IMG/VR virus record: IMGVR_UViG_3300048008_000449
Coordinates: 62,001-126,000 of that record
Strand: one strand, 5' to 3'
DNA: 64,000 nt
The notes below the pieces were generated by a model. The model ran no database searches, was not told the DNA's origin, and worked only from the letters and a program-made list of their open reading frames with translations. How positions within the stretch are numbered: the stretch's first letter is position 1; every line of letters starts with the position of its first letter. Shown in pieces: positions 38,978 to 50,380 of the stretch. A program made the translations under genes and the position numbers.

Positions 38978-39054
38978 TGGTACTCCCGGTAGGATTCGAA
39001 CCTACGATCGACCCGTTATGAGCGGGTGGCATTAGACCGCTATGCTACAAGAGT
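38978..39054 (-). tRNA. tRNA with CAT anticodon, probably tRNA-Ile2 (lysidine type); Met not excluded
   Basis: Cloverleaf; anticodon arm ACCCG-CTCATAA-CGGGT; GGTTCGAATCC; encoded CCA. Confidence 0.85.
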
Positions 39055-39058
39055 ATTC

Positions 39059-39144
39059 TGGTGCCTCCTCCCGGACTCGAACCGGGACGCCATTATGGCC
39101 ACAGATTTTAAGTCTGTTATGTCTACCTATTCCATCAAGGAGGC
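39059..39144 (-). tRNA. tRNA-Leu(TAA)
   Basis: Long variable arm; ACAGA-CTTAAAA-TCTGT; encoded CCA. Confidence 0.95.
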
Positions 39145-39149
39145 TAAAT

Positions 39150-39226
39150 TGGCCTGCTCTACAGGATTCGAACCTGTGACCTACTGCTTAGAAGGCAGTT
39201 GCTCTATCCAGCTGAGCTAAGAGCAG
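39150..39226 (-). tRNA. tRNA-Arg(TCT)
   Basis: ACTGC-CTTCTAA-GCAGT; encoded CCA. Confidence 0.95.
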
Positions 39227-39234
39227 ATAAGTGT

Positions 39235-39522
39235 TTATAGTTGTGTGGGTTCTCTCTTTGTAAGGTCTGTCATGGACTTGATAATGCTATCCACGTTTTC
39301 TTCGGTGAGGTATCCTTTGACAGTATCGCCTTGTTCGGTAATACTTGGTAGTGCTATCATTTTGTTATCTAAAAAGACACCAATTTCATATAGTCCACTT
39401 TTACCGCCATAGGATATGTCGCTTCGAACAATGCTTAGTTCGTAATGAGGGCCAAACTTTACAAGTGCTTGCACACCATTCGGAAATTTGGTTTCCTCCA
39501 TTTTGAGGTCTTTAAGTTTCAT
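39235..39522 (-). CDS. Hypothetical phage protein
   Basis: SYGGKSGLYEIGV...VKGYLT motif. Confidence 0.65.
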   Translation of the reverse strand: MKLKDLKMEETKFPNGVQALVKFGPHYELSIVRSDISYGGKSGLYEIGVFLDNKMIALPSITEQGDTVKGYLTEENVDSIIKSMTDLTKREPTQL

Positions 39523-39525
39523 GTT

Positions 39526-39705
39526 CTACTCTGTTGTTTCGAGGATTTTTAATTGCGAGTTTAGTTCTTCTATGTATTCTTCTAATGTACTTATTGTTGT
39601 GTATAAGTGTCCGGTGTCGTGTTCTTGTATACGACTCCGGATCACTTTCACTGTTTCCGTAAGTACTTCAATTTTGTTTAGAACCTCGCTATAGTCTACT
39701 ATCAT
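39526..39705 (-). CDS. Small coiled-coil protein (..DTGHLYTTIS..), not in the ORF track
   Basis: 59 aa, ATGA coupling. Confidence 0.6.
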   Translation of the reverse strand: MIVDYSEVLNKIEVLTETVKVIRSRIQEHDTGHLYTTISTLEEYIEELNSQLKILETTE

Positions 39706-39923
39706 TTAAAAAACTTTTCAAATTCTTCTGCAGCCTTTTGCTTTGTTTTACTTTTTGATTCAGTTTCATCGTATACGGGCTGTTTGTACATGTTAACGTA
39801 TTCAATTTCTTCTAGAATCTCAATTCTGTCCTTAACCTTCTGTAGTGCTGTACGGATAGACTCGTTGTCTACTTTGTTGATTTCATCATTTAAAATCTCT
39901 ACTATTTGTCTACTATTAATCAT
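39702..39923 (-). CDS. Hypothetical protein
   Basis: SD AGGAG; upstream TTGACA promoter. Confidence 0.6.
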   Translation of the reverse strand: MINSRQIVEILNDEINKVDNESIRTALQKVKDRIEILEEIEYVNMYKQPVYDETESKSKTKQKAAEEFEKFFK

Positions 39924-40093
39924 ATCCGCTCTCCTTAATTATGTTACTAATATAACATCTAATGTTCATAATGTCAACTTCTTTTTTATCTTATTTACTA
40001 GTTTATTACAGATGGTAAATAGTAATATACTTTGTTAATGATATTTATTATAAAACAAAATACCCACAAAGTCAACACCATAAAAGGAAAACA

Positions 40094-41452
40094 ATGAAAA
40101 ATTTTATATTACCACACGGGCCCGATAAACTTCCACAGGACTGTGGAATAGGGTGGTTACTCAACGACAAAATAAGTGATAAAATTGTAGAAGCAACTAC
40201 TGCTAATTTATTAGATTTTTATTCTATCAAATATAGAAAAATAAAACAAGTATCATCATATGACTTTGTAGACTTATGTCAGCAAGGGTTGGATAATGGA
40301 TTCACAAATATTATGATTATGAAACAAGGAATTATTTTACAAGACTTTATAGAAGCAACAAAACCTTATTGGGGTAAAGAATTTAAAGACTGTGTTATTG
40401 TAGGACATATATTAGATAGAGAAGAAGCATGGTGGCAACTACATCCACAATGTATGTGGATAGATCTTGAATGGTGGGCTGAATCAGGGAAACCTTTCTT
40501 TGGTGAGAGATTAGATGATATTGAATGGACAGCTACTAAGGTAGAACGTTCTAAAGAAACGTTAAGTGATCATCAAACATATAATCCAGTATCAATTAGT
40601 GCTACAGATGAAACAGTTGATGTAGTAGGACAACGTACAGGTTGGAACTTATTAAACACTGCATTATCGCAAGGCAAAAAAGTAGCTATGTGGGATAAAC
40701 ATCTACGCAATCAGAAAGAATACGTATATGGTGAAATGGATGATCATTATGAAAAGTTTCATATGGTTGGTGCAGAGTGTTGGGTAACAAGATGGTATTC
40801 TGCAAATACAGAAGACTTAGATACTGTTAGAAAAGATCAAGTGTGTTCAGCTGTGTTTAGTACATGTGGCGGACTAAGTCCTATTATAAATGCATACATA
40901 CAAGGTTTAAAACCAAATGGTAAATTAGTTTGTTACGATCAAGATGTTTTAGCATTACATATGCAAAGTCATATATTTAAAAATTGGGATGGAACTAATT
41001 GGGAACAATTTGTTACACAATATACATTAGATCATTTCATACAATCAATGTTTTTTACAAGACCTGAGAATTTAAAAATAGTAGATGAATATTTAAAAGA
41101 CCTTGGACAAGACTTTGTTGATTGGTGGAGAAAAGAAGCACAATCATTTAACGTTGATTTTAAAAGGTTAGATGTTATGAACATTAATAGATTACAAATG
41201 TTCTTAGATCAAGAAGTTAACAAATTAAAAGAAAACGAAAAAGTTTTTATTGACAGTAGTAATGCATACAATTACGAAGTTAATTCAGTATTGTATTCTC
41301 AGAACATAAGACTTAAATGTGAAAGAGATATGATAAAATACCTTAAAGGGTGTAATGGAAGAGTTATATGGAAAGGGTTTGATACTTTATTAATTAAAGA
41401 TCAACTGGCATATGAATATTTAAGAAAACTATTTCCTTGGCAAGAATTCTAA
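40094..41452 (+). CDS. Hypothetical protein, paralog of 60997..62097
   Basis: 452 aa; shared IGWL, GGLxPI, SN..Y and FPWQ motifs. Confidence 0.7.
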   Translation: MKNFILPHGPDKLPQDCGIGWLLNDKISDKIVEATTANLLDFYSIKYRKIKQVSSYDFVDLCQQGLDNGFTNIMIMKQGIILQDFIEATKPYWGKEFKDCVIVGHILDREEAWWQLHPQCMWIDLEWWAESGKPFFGERLDDIEWTATKVERSKETLSDHQTYNPVSISATDETVDVVGQRTGWNLLNTALSQGKKVAMWDKHLRNQKEYVYGEMDDHYEKFHMVGAECWVTRWYSANTEDLDTVRKDQVCSAVFSTCGGLSPIINAYIQGLKPNGKLVCYDQDVLALHMQSHIFKNWDGTNWEQFVTQYTLDHFIQSMFFTRPENLKIVDEYLKDLGQDFVDWWRKEAQSFNVDFKRLDVMNINRLQMFLDQEVNKLKENEKVFIDSSNAYNYEVNSVLYSQNIRLKCERDMIKYLKGCNGRVIWKGFDTLLIKDQLAYEYLRKLFPWQEF

Positions 41453-41806
41453 ACCAAATTCCCTATCAATATATTTGTGATCTATTTTTATTGGGTTGTA
41501 TTGTTCAAGCCATTTAAATACTATTTCAGGATCAAATGGTCCACAAGTATAAACGTCTAATTGCATTAATGCAGGATCACATTCGTCCCATGTGTGCAAT
41601 ACTATATGTGAAGTTTCTATAATTGTTGCAACTGTAAGTCCTCTGTTGCCAACCATATCTACATATTTTGCAAATGGCCCCATAAGTATTTTCATACCTA
41701 TATCTTCGATCAGAGTTTTTACTTGGTTGCTAGTATGAGTTTCATCACTTGGCGGATTAAGCACTTCCGCTCTAATTATAATGTGCTTATGAACGATATG
41801 GGTCAC
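41429..41806 (-). CDS. speD: S-adenosylmethionine decarboxylase proenzyme
   Basis: IETSHIVLHTW (pyruvoyl-forming Ser) and DVYTC; GTG start 5 nt after TAAATA. Confidence 0.85.
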   Translation of the reverse strand: MTHIVHKHIIIRAEVLNPPSDETHTSNQVKTLIEDIGMKILMGPFAKYVDMVGNRGLTVATIIETSHIVLHTWDECDPALMQLDVYTCGPFDPEIVFKWLEQYNPIKIDHKYIDREFGLEFLPRK

Positions 41807-41823
41807 AAGTATATTTATGAATT

Positions 41824-41900
41824 TGGCGGACCCGAGAGGATTCGAACCTCTGACCTCCTGTTTCGTAGACAGGCATTCTATCCAGCTGAACTACGGGTCC
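41824..41900 (-). tRNA. tRNA-Arg(ACG)
   Basis: CCTGT-CTACGAA-ACAGG; encoded CCA; upstream sigma70-like promoter. Confidence 0.95.
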
Positions 41901-41957
41901 ATTAATTATAATAACATAATGAGACTAGAAGTCAACCTTAAAAATGTATTGGAAATA

Positions 41958-41986
41958 TGCGGGCTTTTGTTCGAAGGTGCCCGCAA
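41958..41986. terminator. Intrinsic terminator candidate
   Basis: tgcgggc...gcccgca hairpin downstream of the OMP gene. Confidence 0.55.
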
Positions 41987-41997
41987 ACCTTATAAAT

Positions 41998-42594
41998 TTA
42001 GAACGATACAGTTAGTTTAACACCAACTTCACGATCAGTTTTGTCCCAATCGTTATTCATTGATTGCTTGATACCTGCTTTTAATGAAGTAGCATCAGTT
42101 AATCTCAAAGATGTACCAATTTCTGCAAATGGTGTATCTCTGTTGATGTCTGTATAATCACCTTCGATTGATTTTAGACCGTAGCCTAATTCACCGTATG
42201 GTGTAAAGTTAGCGATACTTGTTTTAACTCCAACTTTTGGTGTTAAATGTAATTCGCTTTTAGTAAAACTATCGCCCCAATTGTACTCAGCTTCACCTGT
42301 TACATATGCTGTTGCAAGTGTAGATTCTGCTGAACCCAACGGCATGGAAATAGTTTTACCAACAGATACATTATAGTCTCTGTTTGTACCGTTATCTGAT
42401 AACTGTACGCCTAGATCTAAAGAACCGTTAGTGTTATACACACTTACTGATCTTGTAGTATCGTTTGTTGATAATTCAACACCATAAACAGAGCCTTCAG
42501 CAGCCATTGTTAATGATGTATTATCATAATCGTCTGCGATAGCCGTAGACGAGATAAAGGCAGCCATGGCTGCTGTAATGATTAAATTTCTCAT
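41998..42594 (-). CDS. Outer-membrane beta-barrel protein
   Basis: Signal peptide (AIA-D), amphipathic strands, C-terminal Phe (VKLTVSF). Confidence 0.75.
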   Translation of the reverse strand: MRNLIITAAMAAFISSTAIADDYDNTSLTMAAEGSVYGVELSTNDTTRSVSVYNTNGSLDLGVQLSDNGTNRDYNVSVGKTISMPLGSAESTLATAYVTGEAEYNWGDSFTKSELHLTPKVGVKTSIANFTPYGELGYGLKSIEGDYTDINRDTPFAEIGTSLRLTDATSLKAGIKQSMNNDWDKTDREVGVKLTVSF

Positions 42595-42614
42595 AAATGT
42601 TCCTTAATTTATAA

Positions 42615-42928
42615 AATGGTCCCATCTTCGTTAATGGAGGCACTTCTGTTGCCAGGTAGTACCCACCCCTACGTGCTTAGTTAAACTAAGCCGCTAATGC
42701 CATTTCTGGCGAATAATTGTCATTTGCAATTATAGTTTTTGTTCGCGGTAACGGCGCTTACATCCCGGTAACTCCACTCATCTATCCTAACAGTCGATCC
42801 TAGTTCAGCCCCATCAAAAACACACTTACAAGCAGTGATTCAATATCTCATCTATAAATGTGTTTATGGTGGAGCTGCTCGGTACTGCCCCGAGGTCCTG
42901 TCTAGTCGTCAAATCGCTTCAACGTTAC
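42615..42928 (-). ncRNA. ssrA: Two-piece (circularly permuted) tmRNA, alphaproteobacterial type; tag (A)ANDNYSPEMALAA
   Basis: Acceptor piece ...GGGGCAGTACCGAGCAGCTCCACCA (CCA at 42867), hairpin spacer, GGGGCTGAACTAGGATCGAC starting 42812 (G3:U70), tag ORF 42727-42686; TATAAATA at 42935-42942; outer ends approximate. Confidence 0.93.
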
Positions 42929-42951
42929 AAGTTATATTTATACACTCTTGT

Positions 42952-43458
42952 TTATGTTTTGTCAACCTTTTTAAAGACATATTCAAAATTTTGTGTATTT
43001 GGATTATGTTGTACTAATTTTGCACCATTGCTAATATGAAAATGTGTAGCCATTGGTGTAAGTGGAGAAAGTGTAACCAAACGTTCAATATCATTTTTAT
43101 CTTTATAATAATCTTTTAGTTTAGCTACAATTTCTCTGCCAGCTCCTTTTTTACGTGACCATACTGTGTATGCAACTGCTATACTAGCATCATCAAGTAA
43201 ATTAGCATTCTGGCTTATAATGTTTAGTTCTCTTTCACTTTGTGGAATATCGTTACAATATGCAATGCATATAATACCTTGTATCTCATCATTGGCTTTT
43301 AGACCAAATATTTTTCTACCAAATGATGTTCTAAATTCCATATCTAAATTAGGCCTTACTGGATCTTCAGAACAATCTATGTCAGTTAGTTCAACTAGCT
43401 CACTAGATGATACCCACTTAAAGAAGTTATCAATTGAATCTTTAATTACTTTCAACAA
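42952..43458 (-). CDS. Hypothetical protein, GNAT-like
   Basis: YTVWS.KKGAGR, VTLSP...FHISNGA. Confidence 0.55.
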   Translation of the reverse strand: MLKVIKDSIDNFFKWVSSSELVELTDIDCSEDPVRPNLDMEFRTSFGRKIFGLKANDEIQGIICIAYCNDIPQSERELNIISQNANLLDDASIAVAYTVWSRKKGAGREIVAKLKDYYKDKNDIERLVTLSPLTPMATHFHISNGAKLVQHNPNTQNFEYVFKKVDKT

Positions 43459-43464
43459 TTACTC

Positions 43465-43998
43465 CTATAGAGACGCAAACACATTATCAGGGGATGTTTC
43501 TCCATATGGATCTGGATCTGAATCGTTTACGTATCCTGGTTCAATAAACATTTTTGTAATTGTTCCGTTATCAACAATCATTGCATAACGCCAACTACGC
43601 ATACCAAAGCCACGATTGTTAAATGTAACATCCATTCCCATACCTTTAGTAAAGTCGCCGTTTCCATCTGGAATAACTTTGACATTTTTTAAGTTTTGTG
43701 AATCACGCCATGCATTCATAACAAAAGCGTCATTAACACTAATGCAATAAATATCATCTACACCTTTGTCATAAAACTTCTGTGCATCCAATTCAAAGCC
43801 TGGAAGTTGAAATGTAGAGCAAGTAGGTGTAAATGCTCCAGGTAAACTAAACACAATAACTTTCTTGTTATTAAAAATTTCATCAGTAGATAAATCTGCC
43901 CACGTTGATGGCACAATTTCACAATTGTTAGATTCAGCATTTGGATCTGCTACTCTAACTCTAAATGACACTGATGGTACGGTCGTATTTTCTGTCAT
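43465..43998 (-). CDS. Peroxiredoxin (Prx5 type)
   Basis: PGAFTPTCS, SVNDAFVM, RSWRY. Confidence 0.92.
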   Translation of the reverse strand: MTENTTVPSVSFRVRVADPNAESNNCEIVPSTWADLSTDEIFNNKKVIVFSLPGAFTPTCSTFQLPGFELDAQKFYDKGVDDIYCISVNDAFVMNAWRDSQNLKNVKVIPDGNGDFTKGMGMDVTFNNRGFGMRSWRYAMIVDNGTITKMFIEPGYVNDSDPDPYGETSPDNVFASL

Positions 43999-44093
43999 TG
44001 ATGTTCTCCTATAGTTAATCAATTGTCATAATTATAAGGTGTTTTTTACATAAAGTCAAGCATTTTTATAGTTTTTTAATAAATAGTTATAAT

Positions 44094-44405
44094 ATGTTAG
44101 AATCAGAAGTATTACATTTTCAACAATTTATATCACCAATTCTAGGATTAGTGTTTACTGGAATAGTAGCACTATGGATTAAAGATCTGGTAGGCGATTT
44201 AGTAGCAAGCATACGTTGGAAAATGAAGCCAGGATTTGAACCAGGTGATGTTGTATATTTAGATGGTGAAAGAGCTACTATTATTAGTATAGGATATAGA
44301 GAAACTATATTTGAAGTTGATAATGGAAGAGGCAAAGTATGGAGATATATTTACAATACTCGTATTCCTACACACAGATTGGAGAAGTTGATTCATGAAA
44401 AATAA
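44094..44405 (+). CDS. Small membrane protein with MscS-like beta domain
   Basis: TM helix, then FEPGDVVYLDG...IISIG..T. Confidence 0.55.
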   Translation: MLESEVLHFQQFISPILGLVFTGIVALWIKDLVGDLVASIRWKMKPGFEPGDVVYLDGERATIISIGYRETIFEVDNGRGKVWRYIYNTRIPTHRLEKLIHEK

Positions 44406-45150
44406 AACTATAAATTGGAGCCTTGCAGAATTATGTGCATGGATATGTGAATATGCATATGAAGATAAGCAAGCAATGAAAACATACCTATCTGCTAACA
44501 AAATAAAACATACAAATTTAAAATTCTTTGAACAAGATAACGCACAAGCATATGGAATTACAATGCATGATTATATTGTTATTGCATTTAGAGGAACAGA
44601 GCCACATCAATTTAAAGATATCTTAGCTGATATCAAAGCATGGCCTGCTGATGCAGAAACAAAAGGACATGTACATTCAGGATTCAAAGGCGAATTAGAT
44701 AAACTATATCCTAATATTATAAAGTGGTTAGGTAAAAAAGTAACTACTAAAAAAATTGTAATTACTGGACATAGTTTAGGAGCTGCAATGGCAACTATAT
44801 GTGCAAGTAGATTTCATCAGTTAGGTGCTGATCAAGTATTATATACTTACGGATGTCCTAGAACAGGAAATAAAGAATGGGGTAAACAATTTGATGACAT
44901 AGAAGCATATCGTTTTGTTAATAACAATGATATTGTATGCCAAGTTCCACCATTTGGATATTATTCACACATAGGTGAATTATACTATATGTCTTATACT
45001 AATCGTATTAGTAACAAAATGAATTGGTGGCAACGTTTTGGAGATAAAGTAAGAGGAAGATGCAAAGCATGGAGTAAGTTTGAATTCTTCGATAGTTTAT
45101 ATGATCACCTAGGTGCTCATTACATTAAAAAAATTACTTCTCGTAAATAA
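44395..45150 (+). CDS. Class 3 lipase
   Basis: AFRGT, VHSGF, GHSLG, DIV..VP, C-terminal His. Confidence 0.9.
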   Translation: MKNKTINWSLAELCAWICEYAYEDKQAMKTYLSANKIKHTNLKFFEQDNAQAYGITMHDYIVIAFRGTEPHQFKDILADIKAWPADAETKGHVHSGFKGELDKLYPNIIKWLGKKVTTKKIVITGHSLGAAMATICASRFHQLGADQVLYTYGCPRTGNKEWGKQFDDIEAYRFVNNNDIVCQVPPFGYYSHIGELYYMSYTNRISNKMNWWQRFGDKVRGRCKAWSKFEFFDSLYDHLGAHYIKKITSRK

Positions 45151-46108
45151 GTTGTGTTTCATCAATACCGTGTTTCCACGTACCTTCTAAACTTTTAACA
45201 ACACAAGATCCCATTTTATTAATTGTAAGTTCTAATTGTTCTTGACTACCTACGAGTTCTGCTTTTAATACAGAATAACATGGTTGTGGATTCTTTTCTA
45301 TGGCAAGTATACACATATGTTCTAATCCATTATAACGCCAATTGTAACCAATACGTGTATCTTTGCCTTCAATAAATCCATCGTAACGTATTACATCCCA
45401 TAATATAAACTTAACTTTATCTGGCTCTGCTTCTAATACTTTTTCATTGCTAGTTTCTGCAATTTTAGGACCATCTGCAACAACTGCATGTCCGTCATAA
45501 ACAGTACTTTGTCCTTGTGCTAGATTTTTAAATTGTTCGTCATACATATCCCAACCAAGTATTGCATTACCATCTTTATCATTATAGGTAACTGTATCAT
45601 TGTGTATAATAATATTAATACGCAAACCTCTAGAACATTGCTGTACTGAAGCTGGAAATAATTCAAATGATTTGTAATCTTGTGTGGAAGGTGTGCTTAT
45701 AGGATAGCCCATTATTAATCCGGGCCATACTTTGTTAATTGTATCTATTTCTAAACCTAAGTCTAAATCTTGTCTGATTACAGATACAAATATTGGAGCA
45801 TCATATTGATTCATATGTTGCATAGCCATATTACATGAAAAGTACTTTTCTTTTTCAGTGTACTTCTCTTGAATAATATCATCTATTATGTGAGTGAATT
45901 TTGCAATACCCATACCAAACTTTTTACCCATTCGCTTTGGAGTAAAATCTGGCATGTTGAGATTGATCCACGGATTATAAGAAATACTTATAATCCGCTT
46001 CAATATAACTTCTTTGCTGTATTGCTCTAAGATATCTAGTTTATCTTCTTGCGAAGGAGCTACAGTTAAATTTTGTATAATTTCTGATAATAGATGTATT
46101 TTGCTCAT
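45134..46108 (-). CDS. T4 gp30-like DNA ligase paralog lacking KxDG and the OB domain, likely inactive
   Basis: YNP, DLDLG..TINKVWPGLI, YDG, LWDVI, VVKS..G.W; motif I reads QQCSRG. Confidence 0.6.
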   Translation of the reverse strand: MSKIHLLSEIIQNLTVAPSQEDKLDILEQYSKEVILKRIISISYNPWINLNMPDFTPKRMGKKFGMGIAKFTHIIDDIIQEKYTEKEKYFSCNMAMQHMNQYDAPIFVSVIRQDLDLGLEIDTINKVWPGLIMGYPISTPSTQDYKSFELFPASVQQCSRGLRINIIIHNDTVTYNDKDGNAILGWDMYDEQFKNLAQGQSTVYDGHAVVADGPKIAETSNEKVLEAEPDKVKFILWDVIRYDGFIEGKDTRIGYNWRYNGLEHMCILAIEKNPQPCYSVLKAELVGSQEQLELTINKMGSCVVKSLEGTWKHGIDETQLIYEK

Positions 46109-46187
46109 ACAACTATTTATGCGATTAAAACTATACTTTATTTTGGTTTATTAATAAACTCAAGTTCGTCATCAGTGTAAGGCCACA

Positions 46188-46442
46188 TTATGATGATTCC
46201 TTGTTTTTATCTGTTGTATAACCAAATCTTCCTCTGTAAACTTTACCACCATTTGCGATATACGTGATATCACCTCTACAAATACCAATGTCATTTAATT
46301 CGTATTCAGTTAATTGTGAAAGAGCTTTATAAGTTGCATTACGACTTGAACGTCTTGCTCTTGCTTCTAGAAATGCATCAAATGCATTTCTAACTTTGTC
46401 GCAAATTGCACAATAAGTTTTTGTTAGTGTTAGTGTTGTCAT
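46188..46442 (-). CDS. DUF1127 (YjiS-like) protein
   Basis: RR..T.KALSQLTEYELNDIGICRGDI. Confidence 0.85.
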   Translation of the reverse strand: MTTLTLTKTYCAICDKVRNAFDAFLEARARRSSRNATYKALSQLTEYELNDIGICRGDITYIANGGKVYRGRFGYTTDKNKESS

Positions 46443-46660
46443 TTTGCTTTTCTCGCTTCAATTTCTTCACGTACTTCTGCAAGTTCTAACATTAACGCTT
46501 TTGCTTCTGCATAGTACCCTTGTCTTGCAAGTTCACTAGCGGCTTTTGATCTGCCTGCTTGTTCACCCATCTCAATTAATCGTGCAAATACTGCACTAAT
46601 TTTTTCGCCAATTACTTCACATAATCTGCATGTTGTTCTGTATACTGTTGCTGTAGTCAT
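46439..46660 (-). CDS. Small protein with N-terminal CxxC similar to its DUF1127 neighbour
   Basis: MTTATVYRTTCRLC vs MTTLTLTKTYCAIC. Confidence 0.6.
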   Translation of the reverse strand: MTTATVYRTTCRLCEVIGEKISAVFARLIEMGEQAGRSKAASELARQGYYAEAKALMLELAEVREEIEARKAK

Positions 46661-46662
46661 TG

Positions 46663-46866
46663 TTAGATCCATCCTGTAAGGTTTTTATTAATTAAGTCAG
46701 CTCTATATTTAGGTCCCTGACCTCCGTTTGCTCGCATGTATTCATATGCATACGACCAGTCTTTACCGTATTCTGTTTTTGCGTAAGTCATTAGATTCTG
46801 GTCGATAGCCACACGAGTCTTACCGCCAAATATCAATGACCAAGCACTAAAAAAGTGTTTTATCAT
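46663..46866 (-). CDS. Small hypothetical protein
   Basis: YAKTEYGKDWSYAY motif; SD GGAG. Confidence 0.65.
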   Translation of the reverse strand: MIKHFFSAWSLIFGGKTRVAIDQNLMTYAKTEYGKDWSYAYEYMRANGGQGPKYRADLINKNLTGWI

Positions 46867-46884
46867 TTGTATTCTCCGTTATGT

Positions 46885-47090
46885 ATGTGGATGTTTTTGG
46901 GAAAGCATCCAATTGTTTTGCCAGTCTCTCCTGGCCGCTACCACTGCGCCTATGTTGCCACTGCGCCACTTGTAAGGCATGGGTTATGCCCTGGTCTTTC
47001 CCGAGTGCCACTCATTTTTTCTAAGCTGAGGTCGCTTTGTGCTACTTTGCACATGTAAATTACTGTACAACGTTGTACGGTTTTATTACA
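46885..47090 (-). ncRNA. Candidate structured RNA leader with hairpins and repeated AGTGG
   Basis: GC-rich non-coding island with at least 5 hairpins, downstream of TAAATA (47095-47100). Confidence 0.6.
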
Positions 47091-47179
47091 CATCTATTTA
47101 TCATTTAGACCGATAAAAAGTAAGTAAGTATTGTTGCACTATACGCATTTACGAATTGCGTGTAGAGCATGACTCAATA

Positions 47180-48304
47180 TCATTTAGTTGTTGTACTCTC
47201 ATAGGTACGATTAAACTGATTATGTACTGTTACAAATGTTGTACATTTACTGAGTTGTTTTAATTTTAATGCACCTGCATATGTGCAAGTACTGCGTAAT
47301 CCGCCTAGTAGATCTTGAATAGTACTTTCAACATGTCCACGATATGGAACAAGTACTTCTCTACCTTCACTACTACGATAATCTTTTAGGCCACCAAAGT
47401 GTTTTGTGTTTGCGGCATCACTGCTCATACCGTAAAACTGTACGAACTTCTTTTCTTGTACTTTATGTTTACGATTATTTAGATGCTCGCCAATTTCATA
47501 TTCTAATTCATTTGTTTCATAGAACTTTGTAATTACTTCGCCGCCGCCTTGATCATGCCCAGCAAGCATACCACCAAGCATAACAAAATCTGCTCCACCT
47601 GCAAAGGCCTTAGCGACATCGCCAGGGCAAGTACACCCACCGTCAGCAATAATGTGACCCCCAAGTCCATGGGCGGCATCTGCACACTCGATAACCGCAG
47701 ATAACTGCGGGTATCCAACACCAGTTTGTATCCTAGTAGTGCAAACAGAGCCGGGACCAATACCCACTTTAACAATATCAGCTCCACTTAAAATTAACTC
47801 CTCTGTCATTTCTCCGGTAACTACGTTACCTGCTATAATTACTAAGTCTGGAAATTGATCACGTACTTTACGAACACGTGCCGCAAAATGATCACTATAA
47901 CCATTAGCAATATCCATACATATATATTTTAATTGATTAGTATCTGCTTGTACACTAACTAACTTTAAAAAGTCAGCATCACTTGTACCAATACTCATAG
48001 CGACATTTTGTGCTCGTCTACTATCTGGGTAATCGTTATTAAAAAATTCTACAAGTTGTTCTGCTGAATAAGTCTTAACTAGGCAAGTAAAGATACCTTG
48101 TTGTGCAAGAGTGTCTGCCATTTCAAACGTACCAACACCATCCATGTTAGCGGCCATAATAGGAACACCTTCATATTCTGCTTTACTGTTTCTAAATTTA
48201 AACTTGCGTTCTAGCCTTACTTGTTTACGTGATACAAGTGTTGAACGTTTGGGACGAATCAATACATCACTATAATCTAGTTTTACTTCGTTTTCAATTC
48301 TCAT
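47180..48304 (-). CDS. guaC: GMP reductase
   Basis: [37 protein letters not shown]. Confidence 0.95.
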
Positions 48305-50131: not shown

Positions 50132-50380
50132 TTAATTATTTGTATACTTGTCTTTAGCAATACGTCTACGATGTCTAGCACGTCCTGCCGCTTCTGCTTT
50201 AAGTCTTTTTTCCGTATTACTTATAAAGTGTTTACGGTCACGAACTTCTTGCATAATACCATCTTTAGCAATCATCTTTTTTAATCTTCTCATTGCTTGT
50301 TCAACGTTATTATTTCTAACTTCAACTGTTAATCCGTTTCCGCCTTTTCTGTCTCTGTCTCTGTGATTATTATTTGCCAT
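50132..50380 (-). CDS. rpsU: 30S ribosomal protein bS21
   Basis: VEVRNNNVEQAMRRLKK...G...EVRDRKHF. Confidence 0.9.
   Translation of the reverse strand: MANNNHRDRDRKGGNGLTVEVRNNNVEQAMRRLKKMIAKDGIMQEVRDRKHFISNTEKRLKAEAAGRARHRRRIAKDKYTNN

What the first reader, a model, noticed from the sequence alone, without database searches (positions are those of the whole stretch)
42615..42942. Phage-borne circularly permuted tmRNA under a late promoter
Seen: the acceptor (CCA) piece precedes the 5' GGGGCTG piece, separated by a 54-nt spacer that can pair (AAACACATTTATA / TGTAAGTGTGTTT). The T-loop is GGCAGTA, the tag is ANDNYSPEMALAA, and a perfect TATAAATA lies upstream. Established: this permuted layout, the non-TTC T-loop and ANDN...AA tags typify Alphaproteobacteria. 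It points to the host class and is easily missed by tRNA scanners.
Basis: partly seen in the sequence, partly recalled or inferred. Interest (0 to 1): 0.62.

Follow-up and report, generated by a model that had tools for sequence, protein, structure and literature searches.

The report
Two-piece tmRNA gene in a marine jumbo phage
A large marine phage carries a complete ribosome-rescue RNA (tmRNA) gene of the split, alphaproteobacterial type; such genes are already known in marine phages, so this is a new example, notable mainly for its conserved promoter that combines an early and a late signal.

Summary
ARAGORN and two Rfam models find a complete circularly permuted tmRNA at about 42610-42928. 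The alpha_tmRNA model scores 123 bits (cut-off 50); the beta and cyanobacterial permuted models fail.

The record is a 204.8 kb fragment of a jumbo myovirus. TerL is 56% identical to PA5oct and 51% to Sinorhizobium phage Phosso. It is not a T4-like pelagimyophage. No SmpB or integrase was found.

At least 66 related viral tmRNAs split from 56 bacterial alphaproteobacterial ones at one well-supported branch. Compensatory changes support the T-arm and acceptor stem, and the G3-U70 alanine pair is invariant.

"Late promoter" is only half right. NATAAATA is a real late-gene box in this phage, and relatives encode gp55. But the tmRNA box sits exactly 17 nt after a consensus TTGACA, and this pairing is kept in 49 of 56 related loci. 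That suggests a hybrid early-plus-late promoter.

"Points to the host class" is plausible but unsafe. A published phage of a non-alphaproteobacterial host carries the same tmRNA type.

Two-piece tmRNAs in marine phages were described in 2022, so this is a new member of a known kind. RNA processing, charging and tagging remain untested.

The parts
42960..42965 (-). -35 box TTGACA, inside GGTTGACA, the extended box of this phage's early promoter class. It overlaps the 3' end of the upstream ORF.
   Evidence: Exactly 17 nt before TATAAATA. TTGAC[A/T] at 16-18 nt is kept in 49 of 56 related viral loci while the spacer sequence varies.
42935..42942 (-). TATAAATA box: a -10 element lacking the -7 T, and at the same time a T4-type late-promoter word.
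   Evidence: ATAAATA is present in 36 of 114 upstream regions against 2.3 expected. It precedes TerL, sheath, tube, adaptor and virion genes. Exact TATAAATA sits at the same position in 54 related loci. The strict sigma-70 scan does not call it.
42867..42928 (-). Acceptor piece (62 nt): 5' strand of helix P2, T-arm (42894-42878, T-loop GGCAGUA 42889-42883), 3' strand of the acceptor stem and ACCA.
   Evidence: T-arm pairs show 6-8 compensatory changes and acceptor-stem pairs 7 and 11 among 18 relatives. The first base coincides with the start of the RF04321 match and lies 6 nt after the TATAAATA box.
42813..42866 (-). 54-nt intervening spacer, presumably excised. It forms a 13-bp hairpin stacked on the acceptor stem.
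   Evidence: The hairpin is kept in all 18 relatives with loops of very different length. Bacterial alpha tmRNAs have hairpins of unrelated sequence at the same place.
42633..42812 (-). Coding piece: 5' acceptor strand GGGGCUG with G3 of the G3-U70 pair, D-loop-like GAACUAGGAUCGAC, 3' strand of P2, tag reading frame and 3' helices. The 3' end is not defined and lies somewhere in 42610-42633.
   Evidence: G-U is invariant in 18 of 18. No intrinsic terminator is called before the next gene.
42686..42727 (-). Tag reading frame: resume codon GCA, tag ANDNYSPEMALAA, stop UAG.
   Evidence: The same or near-same tag (ANDNY[S/A/K/Q]PEMALAA) occurs in about 17 related viral contigs.
41998..42594 (-). 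Downstream gene: phage outer-membrane-protein-like beta-barrel (PF24653), possibly co-transcribed with the tmRNA.
   Evidence: The tmRNA-then-OMP order is kept in L078, L090, L096, L153 and L056. RNA-library contigs span 41982-42778.
42952..43458 (-). Upstream gene of 168 aa with a weak GNAT-like match, 63% identical to Pelagibacter phage Mosig_00145.
   Evidence: It is found near the tmRNA in 15 viral loci. It is far more conserved than the core genes, which are 27-36% identical.

Best explanation
This is a working phage copy of the two-piece (circularly permuted) alphaproteobacterial-type tmRNA, carried by a marine jumbo myovirus.

Proposed pathway (inferred from the anatomy and from the known Caulobacter pathway):
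1. One precursor is transcribed from the TTGACA-N17-TATAAATA promoter, starting about 42928.
2. Host enzymes excise the 54-nt hairpin spacer. RNase P would cut before G42812, and 3' trimming would stop at the CCA ending at 42867.
3. This leaves a 62-nt acceptor piece and a coding piece of about 180-200 nt, held together by the acceptor stem and helix P2.
4. Host alanyl-tRNA synthetase charges the RNA through the G3-U70 pair.
5. Host SmpB (none is encoded in the DNA held) and EF-Tu deliver it to ribosomes stalled on broken mRNAs.
6. Translation resumes at GCA and adds ANDNYSPEMALAA, which marks the product for host proteases.

The likely benefit to the phage is keeping ribosomes free while host and phage mRNAs are being degraded.

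The promoter combines a host sigma-70 -35 box with a gp55-type late box, so the RNA is probably made from early infection through the late phase.

Shown here: the gene, its type, its conservation and covariation, and its promoter architecture. Inferred: processing, charging, tagging, timing and benefit.
For: - Complete gene by three methods.
- The alpha model passes at 123 bits. Beta gives 48.6 bits against a cut-off of 84, and cyano 21.8 against 70.
- G3-U70 is invariant, with compensatory changes in the T-arm and acceptor stem among 18 relatives.
- The tag frame with an ALAA ending is conserved in about 17 contigs at 70-87% nucleotide identity.
- 66 viral tmRNAs split from 56 bacterial ones at one branch, SH-aLRT 99.
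- The gene is kept in related jumbo phages: G001 (335 kb contig), G002 (204 kb) and cultured Phosso.
- Promoter boxes are conserved in 49 of 56 loci with a free spacer sequence.
- A late-box class is shown for structural genes, and gp55 is present in 5 of 5 relatives.
- Four metatranscriptomes hold contigs of the coding piece. A neighbouring stretch is silent in all four, and the deepest contigs in X18 lie on the coding piece.
- No integrase was found.
- Published precedent: PMC9004378.
Against: - No experiment or raw-read evidence shows the two processed pieces, charging or tagging.
- The RNA evidence is contigs only, partly from close relatives, and DNA carry-over cannot be fully excluded.
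- The score on the alpha model is far below cellular tmRNAs, 123 against 234-317 bits, so some function could be altered.
- No SmpB was found and the host is unknown, so compatibility with the host's SmpB is assumed.
- gp55 was not found in this contig. Its presence is inferred from relatives and from gene spacing.
- The -10 box lacks the -7 T that sigma-70 prefers.
Confidence: 0.8

Rival explanations
1. A pure late gene. The RNA is made only late, from a gp55-dependent TATAAATA promoter, and the upstream TTGACA is irrelevant.
For: TATAAATA is exact and sits 6 nt before the first base of the RNA. The same 8-mer is kept in 54 relatives. NATAAATA marks late structural genes. The box lacks the -7 T of sigma-70 promoters. 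gp55 is present in relatives.
Against: TTGAC[A/T] at 16-18 nt (almost always 17) is conserved in 49 of 56 loci although the intervening sequence is free. That is not expected for a T4-type late promoter. Almost none of the phage's other late boxes have a -35 box. The -35 context aaaaagGTTGACA is that of the phage's early promoter class. T is the rarest base before ATAAATA among the late boxes, 4 of 45.
Confidence: 0.2
2. A purely early or host-type gene. TTGACA-N17-TATAAA is an ordinary strong sigma-70 promoter, and the resemblance to the late box is incidental.
For: Perfect -35 box, 17-nt spacing and 5 of 6 in the -10 box. The same geometry as about 15 early promoters of this phage. The Melnitz ssrA was assigned to an early promoter (PMC9004378).
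Against: The full 8-mer TATAAATA is kept in 54 of 56 loci, rather than TATAAT or the phage's own early TATACT. The -7 T is consistently absent.
Confidence: 0.25
3. A passenger or remnant: a piece of host ssrA picked up through integration at the host tmRNA gene (an attP-like fragment), or a recently captured host gene with no role.
For: Host ssrA genes are common integration sites, and prophages often carry ssrA fragments (PMC9004378, PMC4383910).
Against: The gene is full length, model positions 1-355. There is no integrase. It is conserved with compensatory changes and its own promoter across dozens of viral contigs. No sampled bacterial tmRNA is close: best 74% over 106 nt in 401 genomes.
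Confidence: 0.03
4. A modified tmRNA used against the host. It would either act as a decoy that ties up host SmpB and blocks host trans-translation, or redirect tagging to recycle host proteins, rather than simply rescuing ribosomes.
For: The low score against the cellular model. The tag is three residues longer than the ANDNEMALAA seen in several bacteria. Selective tagging was proposed in PMC9004378.
Against: All elements needed for normal function are intact: G3-U70, T-arm, resume-codon context and the ALAA end. Nothing indicates a loss of function.
Confidence: 0.07

Closest known systems
Two-piece tmRNA (ssrA) of marine myophages: Methylophilales phage Melnitz, Pelagibacter phage Mosig and pelagimyophage contigs (Buchholz et al. 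2022, PMC9004378)
   Same: Permuted alpha-type tmRNA carried by a lytic marine myovirus without SmpB. The same acceptor-end and spacer-hairpin design is used. Homologous neighbouring genes are nearby: the Mosig_00145 homologue at 63% identity and a peroxiredoxin. Both fall in the same overall viral tmRNA clade.
   Different: - The carrier is a different phage lineage. Ours is a jumbo phage (TerL 36% to Mosig, 56% to PA5oct). CheckV-implied sizes are 270-485 kb for our sub-clade against about 140-145 kb for Mosig-like contigs.
- It sits in a different tmRNA sub-clade.
- The promoter differs: TTGACA-N17-TATAAATA here, with no such box in 59 Mosig-like loci.
- It is not next to gp33.
- No glutamine riboswitch was found in the window at Rfam gathering thresholds.
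Caulobacter crescentus two-piece tmRNA (Keiler, Shapiro and Williams 2000, cited in PMC9004378) and cellular alpha_tmRNA RF01849
   Same: Gene order with the acceptor piece first, then an excised spacer, then the coding piece. GGCNGUA T-loop, ANDN... tag, G3-U70 pair, and a hairpin directly after CCA.
   Different: Ours scores 123 bits against 234-317 bits for 59 cellular genes. It falls outside the bacterial side of the tree. It is AT-rich and phage-encoded.
tmRNA of the cultured jumbo phage Sinorhizobium phage Phosso (PV764938.1)
   Same: Related jumbo phage (TerL 51%), with an alphaproteobacterial host, an alpha_tmRNA hit of 108 bits and gp55 present.
   Different: The Phosso match spans 690 nt, lies in an unannotated gap and is not found by ARAGORN. 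It was not aligned to ours in detail.
One-piece tmRNAs of other jumbo or huge phages, as mentioned in many genome papers
   Same: A large phage carrying its own tmRNA together with tRNAs as a translation toolkit.
   Different: Those are standard one-piece tmRNAs. Ours is permuted and of the alpha type.

Membership tests
Alphaproteobacterial-type two-piece tmRNA (Rfam RF01849 / RF04321) | Covariance-model score above the curated cut-off over the full model | tested here: met
   RF01849: 123.4 bits against 50, model positions 1-355. RF04321: 111 bits against 47, positions 1-213.
Alphaproteobacterial-type two-piece tmRNA (Rfam RF01849 / RF04321) | Circular permutation: the CCA-bearing acceptor piece is encoded upstream of the 5' acceptor strand and tag frame, separated by a spacer | tested here: met
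   ACCA ends at 42867, the spacer is 42866-42813 and GGGGCUG is at 42812-42806.
Alphaproteobacterial-type two-piece tmRNA (Rfam RF01849 / RF04321) | Alpha type rather than the beta or cyanobacterial permuted lineages | tested here: met
   beta_tmRNA 48.6 bits (cut-off 84) and cyano_tmRNA 21.8 bits (cut-off 70) both fail. The T-loop GGCAGUA matches the alpha consensus GGCgGUA.
Functional tmRNA (any type) | tRNA-Ala-like acceptor stem with a G3-U70 pair and a 3' CCA | tested here: met
   7-bp stem with G-U at position 3. The pair is invariant in 18 of 18 relatives, and neighbouring pairs covary.
Functional tmRNA (any type) | Tag reading frame starting at an alanine resume codon and ending in a protease-recognised hydrophobic tail (..LAA) | tested here: met
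   GCA ... UAG encodes ANDNYSPEMALAA.
Functional tmRNA (any type) | Partner protein SmpB available | tested here: not met
   No PF01668 match in the 204.8 kb held. The record is about 56% complete, and host SmpB is presumed to serve, as for the published phage tmRNAs.
Functional tmRNA (any type) | Processed into two pieces, aminoacylated, and tags proteins in vivo | not testable with these tools
   Only Logan contigs of RNA libraries were available. They cannot show RNA ends.
T4-type late promoter (gp55-dependent) | TATAAATA box about 6 nt before the start, with no -35 element | tested here: inconclusive
   The box is present and well placed. But a conserved consensus -35 box lies 17 nt upstream.
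T4-type late promoter (gp55-dependent) | The phage encodes a gp55 late sigma factor | tested here: inconclusive
   Not found in this contig. Present in 5 of 5 relatives. By gene spacing in G002 it is expected about 10 kb beyond the contig end.
Pelagimyophage / T4-like Kyanoviridae | T4 core genes (gp23, gp20, gp45, gp55, gp33) closely similar to Mosig or HTVC008M | tested here: not met
   tblastn finds no gp23, gp45, gp55 or gp33. DNA polymerase is 27% and TerL 34% identical to Mosig. The best TerL relatives are the jumbo phages PA5oct, Phosso and Atu_ph07.

The most novel reading that the evidence does not exclude
Marine phages maintain an old, virus-specific lineage of alpha-type two-piece tmRNA that is no longer close to any cellular ssrA. 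It has two branches that track two unrelated phage groups: T4-like phages of about 140 kb and jumbo phages of 270 kb or more. The jumbo branch has evolved a fixed hybrid promoter, a sigma-70 -35 box plus a gp55 late box placed so that transcription starts at the first base of the RNA. This would give tmRNA supply throughout infection. If so, the tmRNA type reports the ancestry of the phage gene rather than the present host.
Probability: 0.45. Interest if true: 0.45.

Novelty: new member of a known kind. Interest (0 to 1): 0.3.

Why it matters
Phage-encoded tmRNAs are widespread, yet no function has been demonstrated for any of them. This example extends the marine two-piece type from T4-like pelagimyophages to a cosmopolitan jumbo-phage lineage; nearly the whole 4-kb stretch around the gene is held by at least 14 seawater or viral metagenome runs.

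The sharply defined, conserved promoter (TTGACA-N17-TATAAATA, with the start at the first base of the RNA) gives a concrete handle for testing when and why phages supply their own ribosome-rescue RNA.

It also cautions against using tmRNA type as a host predictor. In addition, it exposes annotation gaps: an unannotated tmRNA in the cultured phage Phosso, and a 335 kb phage genome binned as a bacterial MAG.

Tried and rejected
- **TATAAATA as a common promoter word.** The exact 8-mer occurs only 11 times in the genome. It is the rarest of 56 same-composition words and only 3 copies are intergenic. The real late motif is NATAAATA, with G or C preferred before it.
- **Pelagimyophage identity.** Rejected.
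- **gp55, gp33, SmpB and integrase in this contig.** None found. For gp55 this is most likely because the contig is incomplete.
- **Bacterial source through the 18-mer that spans the acceptor end and spacer start.** Of 59 genome hits, 56 were chance matches without a tmRNA, mostly in filamentous cyanobacteria. No Pelagibacter genome was retrieved.
- **BLAST against 401 alphaproteobacterial genomes.** Only short, weak matches.
- **Covariation test of the spacer hairpin within the viral set.** Not possible, because its 5' arm was fixed by the search word. Bacterial spacers were used instead.
- **Terminase-based typing of 16 tmRNA-bearing viral fragments.** None contained a terminase, so CheckV-implied sizes were used.
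- **Intrinsic terminator after the gene.** None called.
- **RNA-library joint 42741 to 42860.** Seen in one contig of X17 with a 29-letter side. Set aside as unreliable.
- **Literature search for the tag sequences.** Nothing found.
- **Not used.** Structure prediction, complex prediction and the large protein searches were not needed for an RNA gene.

Full report

Yes, on the minus strand.

- ARAGORN reports a permuted tmRNA at 42595-42959(-) with tag ANDNYSPEMALAA.
- Rfam alpha_tmRNA (RF01849) matches 42633-42979(-) over the whole model at 123.4 bits (cut-off 50, E 3.6e-33).
- The newer tmRNA_permuted model (RF04321) matches 42686-42928(-) at 111 bits.
- The beta and cyanobacterial permuted models fail their cut-offs, at 48.6 against 84 bits and 21.8 against 70 bits.

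Reading the sequence gives these parts:

- The acceptor piece runs 42928-42867 (62 nt) and ends in ACCA.
- The T-arm is CUCGG / GGCAGUA / CCGAG.
- The spacer is exactly 54 nt (42866-42813).
- The spacer's two 13-nt arms pair at all 13 positions, two of them G-U.
- GGGGCUG follows at 42812-42806 and forms a 7-bp acceptor stem with a G3-U70 pair.
- The tag frame GCA...UAG is at 42727-42686.
- TATAAATA is at 42942-42935.

The minimum-energy fold of 42930-42765 reproduces the T-arm, the acceptor stem and the stacked spacer hairpin (z = -2.4).

**2. What carries it?**

The window is bases 62001-126000 of a 204,772-bp IMG/VR virus record. The record has 34% G+C, and CheckV rates it about 56% complete.

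- It encodes a large terminase, tail sheath, tail tube, head-tail adaptor, virion proteins, UvsX, an SSB, ribonucleotide reductase and 9 tRNAs.
- It is not a T4-like pelagimyophage. Against Pelagibacter phage Mosig, the DNA polymerase is 27% and TerL 34-36% identical. No gp23, gp45, gp55 or gp33 is detected.
- The nearest terminases belong to jumbo phages: PA5oct 56%, Sinorhizobium phage Phosso 51%, Agrobacterium phage Atu_ph07 49%, and the Rak2/GAP32 group 45%.
- Two uncultured relatives carry the same kind of tmRNA. One is a 204,100-bp viral contig (G002, TerL 58%). The other is a 335-kb contig filed in a "Neomarinimicrobiota" MAG (G001, TerL 55%). In the latter, TerL, gp55 and the tmRNA all lie on one contig, so it is a phage genome.

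No SmpB and no integrase is found in the DNA held.

**3. Is it a maintained gene?**

An 18-nt word spanning the acceptor 3' end and the start of the spacer hits at least 120 IMG/VR contigs. ARAGORN finds a permuted tmRNA in 70 of the 122 loci scanned. About 17 contigs have tags ANDNY[S/A/K/Q]PEMALAA and are 70-87% identical to ours.

In an alignment of 18 relatives (A2), RNAalifold shows:

- 6-8 compensatory changes per variable T-stem pair;
- 7 and 11 compensatory changes in two acceptor-stem pairs;
- an invariant G-U at the alanine identity position.

The spacer hairpin is present in all 18, with loops from about 5 to more than 60 nt. Its 5' arm was fixed by my search word, so covariation cannot be judged within the viral set. 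Bacterial alpha tmRNAs do show hairpins of quite different sequence directly after CCA. This fits a conserved precursor feature.

Close relatives share the neighbourhood: ligase, lipase, peroxiredoxin, tmRNA, then an OMP-like gene. The order tmRNA-then-OMP-like gene is also kept in the 335-kb phage.

**4. Where does it come from?**

- Cellular alphaproteobacterial tmRNAs score 234-317 bits on RF01849 (59 of 61 genomes). Ours scores 123 bits.
- BLAST of our gene against 401 genomes sampled across the class finds nothing better than 74% over 106 nt or 67% over 190 nt.
- In a maximum-likelihood tree of 122 tmRNAs, the 66 viral sequences and the 56 bacterial ones, including low-GC small genomes, are separated by a single branch with SH-aLRT 99.
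- Ours lies in a well-supported 15-member group together with the 335-kb phage. Mosig lies in the other large viral branch.

CheckV-implied genome sizes split the same way. Contigs of the Mosig-like branch come out at about 140-145 kb. Contigs of our branch come out at about 270-485 kb.

There are caveats. The viral set was ascertained with one 18-mer. Base composition differs between the two groups. The root is unknown.

**5. The promoter**

The exact 8-mer TATAAATA is rare in this genome: 11 copies, the rarest of the 56 same-composition words. A de novo count of words upstream of ORFs shows two classes.

- ATAAATA occurs in 36 of 114 upstream regions against 2.3 expected. The preceding base is G in 20 cases, C in 11, A in 10 and T in 4. 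It sits in front of TerL, sheath, tube, adaptor, a tail-fibre-like gene and virion genes. It almost never has a -35 box. This is a T4-type late class.
- GGTTGACA-N17-TATACT/TATAAT occurs in about 15 nearly identical copies before small ORFs. This is a sigma-70-type early class.

gp55 is not in this contig, but it is present in all five relatives tested. In G002 the order and spacing are tmRNA at 54 kb, TerL at 110.5 kb and gp55 at 162.7 kb. In our contig the tmRNA is at 104.8 kb and TerL at 162.4 kb. That predicts gp55 near 214 kb, just beyond the contig end. This is an inference.

The tmRNA promoter reads aaaaagGTTGACA, then 17 nt, then TATAAATA, then 6 nt, then the first base of helix P2. 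It therefore combines the early -35 box with the late box.

Among 121 related viral loci, 56 have TATAAAT[A/G] at this position, 54 of them the exact 8-mer. Of those 56, 49 have TTGAC[A/T] at 16-18 nt upstream, nearly always 17, while the spacer sequence varies freely. Both boxes are therefore under selection.

The box lacks the -7 T that sigma-70 prefers, so a strict scan does not call it. That suggests it is constrained to remain a late box.

I read this as a hybrid promoter giving expression from early infection into the late phase, with confidence about 0.5. The pure-late and pure-early readings remain open.

The Mosig-like branch lacks this box.

**6. Expression**

At least 14 seawater or viral metagenome runs hold almost all of the 4-kb stretch, and six metatranscriptomes hold parts of it.

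Laid on 41000-45000, RNA-library contigs from four runs cover the OMP-like gene, the tmRNA coding piece and the peroxiredoxin gene. All four leave 44082-44617 empty, which argues against simple DNA carry-over.

In X18 the deepest contigs (word depth about 99-130) lie on 42682-42775. Their flanks match the L078-type relative, not this exact phage. One 865-nt contig spans 41982-42778.

Contigs cannot show ends, strand or level, so processing into two pieces is untested. No intrinsic terminator is called between the tmRNA and the next gene.

**7. Comparison with what is known**

Buchholz et al. 2022 (PMC9004378) described two-piece tmRNAs in phage Melnitz, phage Mosig and pelagimyophage contigs.

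- They counted 53 two-piece forms among 133 unique phage tmRNAs, 50 of them from marine or aquatic phages.
- They showed that Melnitz carries the alphaproteobacterial type although its host, OM43, is not an alphaproteobacterium.

tmRNAs in jumbo phages are mentioned in many genome papers. The present gene is therefore a new member of a known kind.

What may be new in detail is its place in a PA5oct/Phosso-related marine jumbo lineage, and the conserved hybrid promoter.

The host-class inference is weakened by the Melnitz precedent and by the virus-specific clade. It is mildly supported by Phosso, a relative that infects Sinorhizobium and also has an alpha-type tmRNA.

**8. Verdict**

- Observation: confirmed.
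- Interpretation: partly supported.
- Best explanation: a functional phage two-piece tmRNA that relies on host SmpB, AlaRS and RNase P (confidence 0.8).
- Promoter timing and host: unresolved.
- Novelty: new member of a known kind. Interest 0.3.

Noticed in passing
window 57936, 59733, 59980, 60925 (minus strand); also genome 156044, 157255, 180129: About 15 nearly identical early-type promoters of the form GGTTGACA-N17-TATACT. Their 17-nt spacer holds a perfect inverted repeat (AGTAAGA..TCTTACT). This could be an operator for a regulator that switches early transcription off.
   Followed up: partly
window 10979, 46120, 55365; genome 128773, 155072, 163205 (TerL), 178245: At least 7 late boxes are followed by the start codon after only 5 nt (ATAAATA-N5-ATG). 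These late mRNAs, including the terminase mRNA, may be leaderless.
   Followed up: no
L258 / L267: Sinorhizobium phage Phosso PV764938.1, 349553-350242 (minus strand): An alpha_tmRNA match of 108 bits lies in a 750-bp gap with no annotation in the GenBank record. ARAGORN does not detect it.
   Followed up: partly
L153 / L259 / L193 / L265: contig PBPT01000016.1 (335,231 bp) of a 'Candidatus Neomarinimicrobiota' MAG: This contig carries TerL (55% to ours), a gp55 late sigma factor and a permuted alpha-type tmRNA. It is a jumbo phage genome binned into a bacterial MAG. The same MAG holds a second contig with an identical-scoring TerL and gp55.
   Followed up: partly
window 42952-43458 (minus strand): The 168-aa ORF upstream of the tmRNA is 63% identical to Mosig_00145, while core genes are only 27-36% identical. 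It and a peroxiredoxin recur near tmRNAs in both phage lineages, which suggests a small shared or exchanged module.
   Followed up: partly
window 38978-41900 (minus strand) and genome 128779-131311: Nine tRNA genes lie in two clusters (Met, Leu-UAA, Arg-UCU, Arg-ACG; Glu, Asp, Ala, Leu-UAG, Thr). There is also a ribosomal protein S21 homologue near window 50210-50332. With the tmRNA they form a translation toolkit.
   Followed up: no
window 41429-48304: A run of auxiliary metabolic genes surrounds the tmRNA: S-adenosylmethionine decarboxylase, peroxiredoxin, class-3 lipase, ATP-dependent DNA ligase and an IMP dehydrogenase/GMP reductase-family enzyme. A tryptophan-halogenase-like gene lies at genome 180184-181389.
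   Followed up: no
window 42741 to 42860: One metatranscriptome contig (X17, depth 19) joins these two places and skips 118 nt inside the tmRNA gene. The shorter side is only 29 letters, so it may come from a relative or be an assembly artefact.
   Followed up: no
L169 / L228: 'Hyphomicrobiales' MAG, 1.38 Mb contig, 33% G+C: This bacterial tmRNA has an unusually long 184-nt spacer that begins with the same UAAACACAUU as the phage spacers. Relatives of this genome have spacers of only 11 nt.
   Followed up: no
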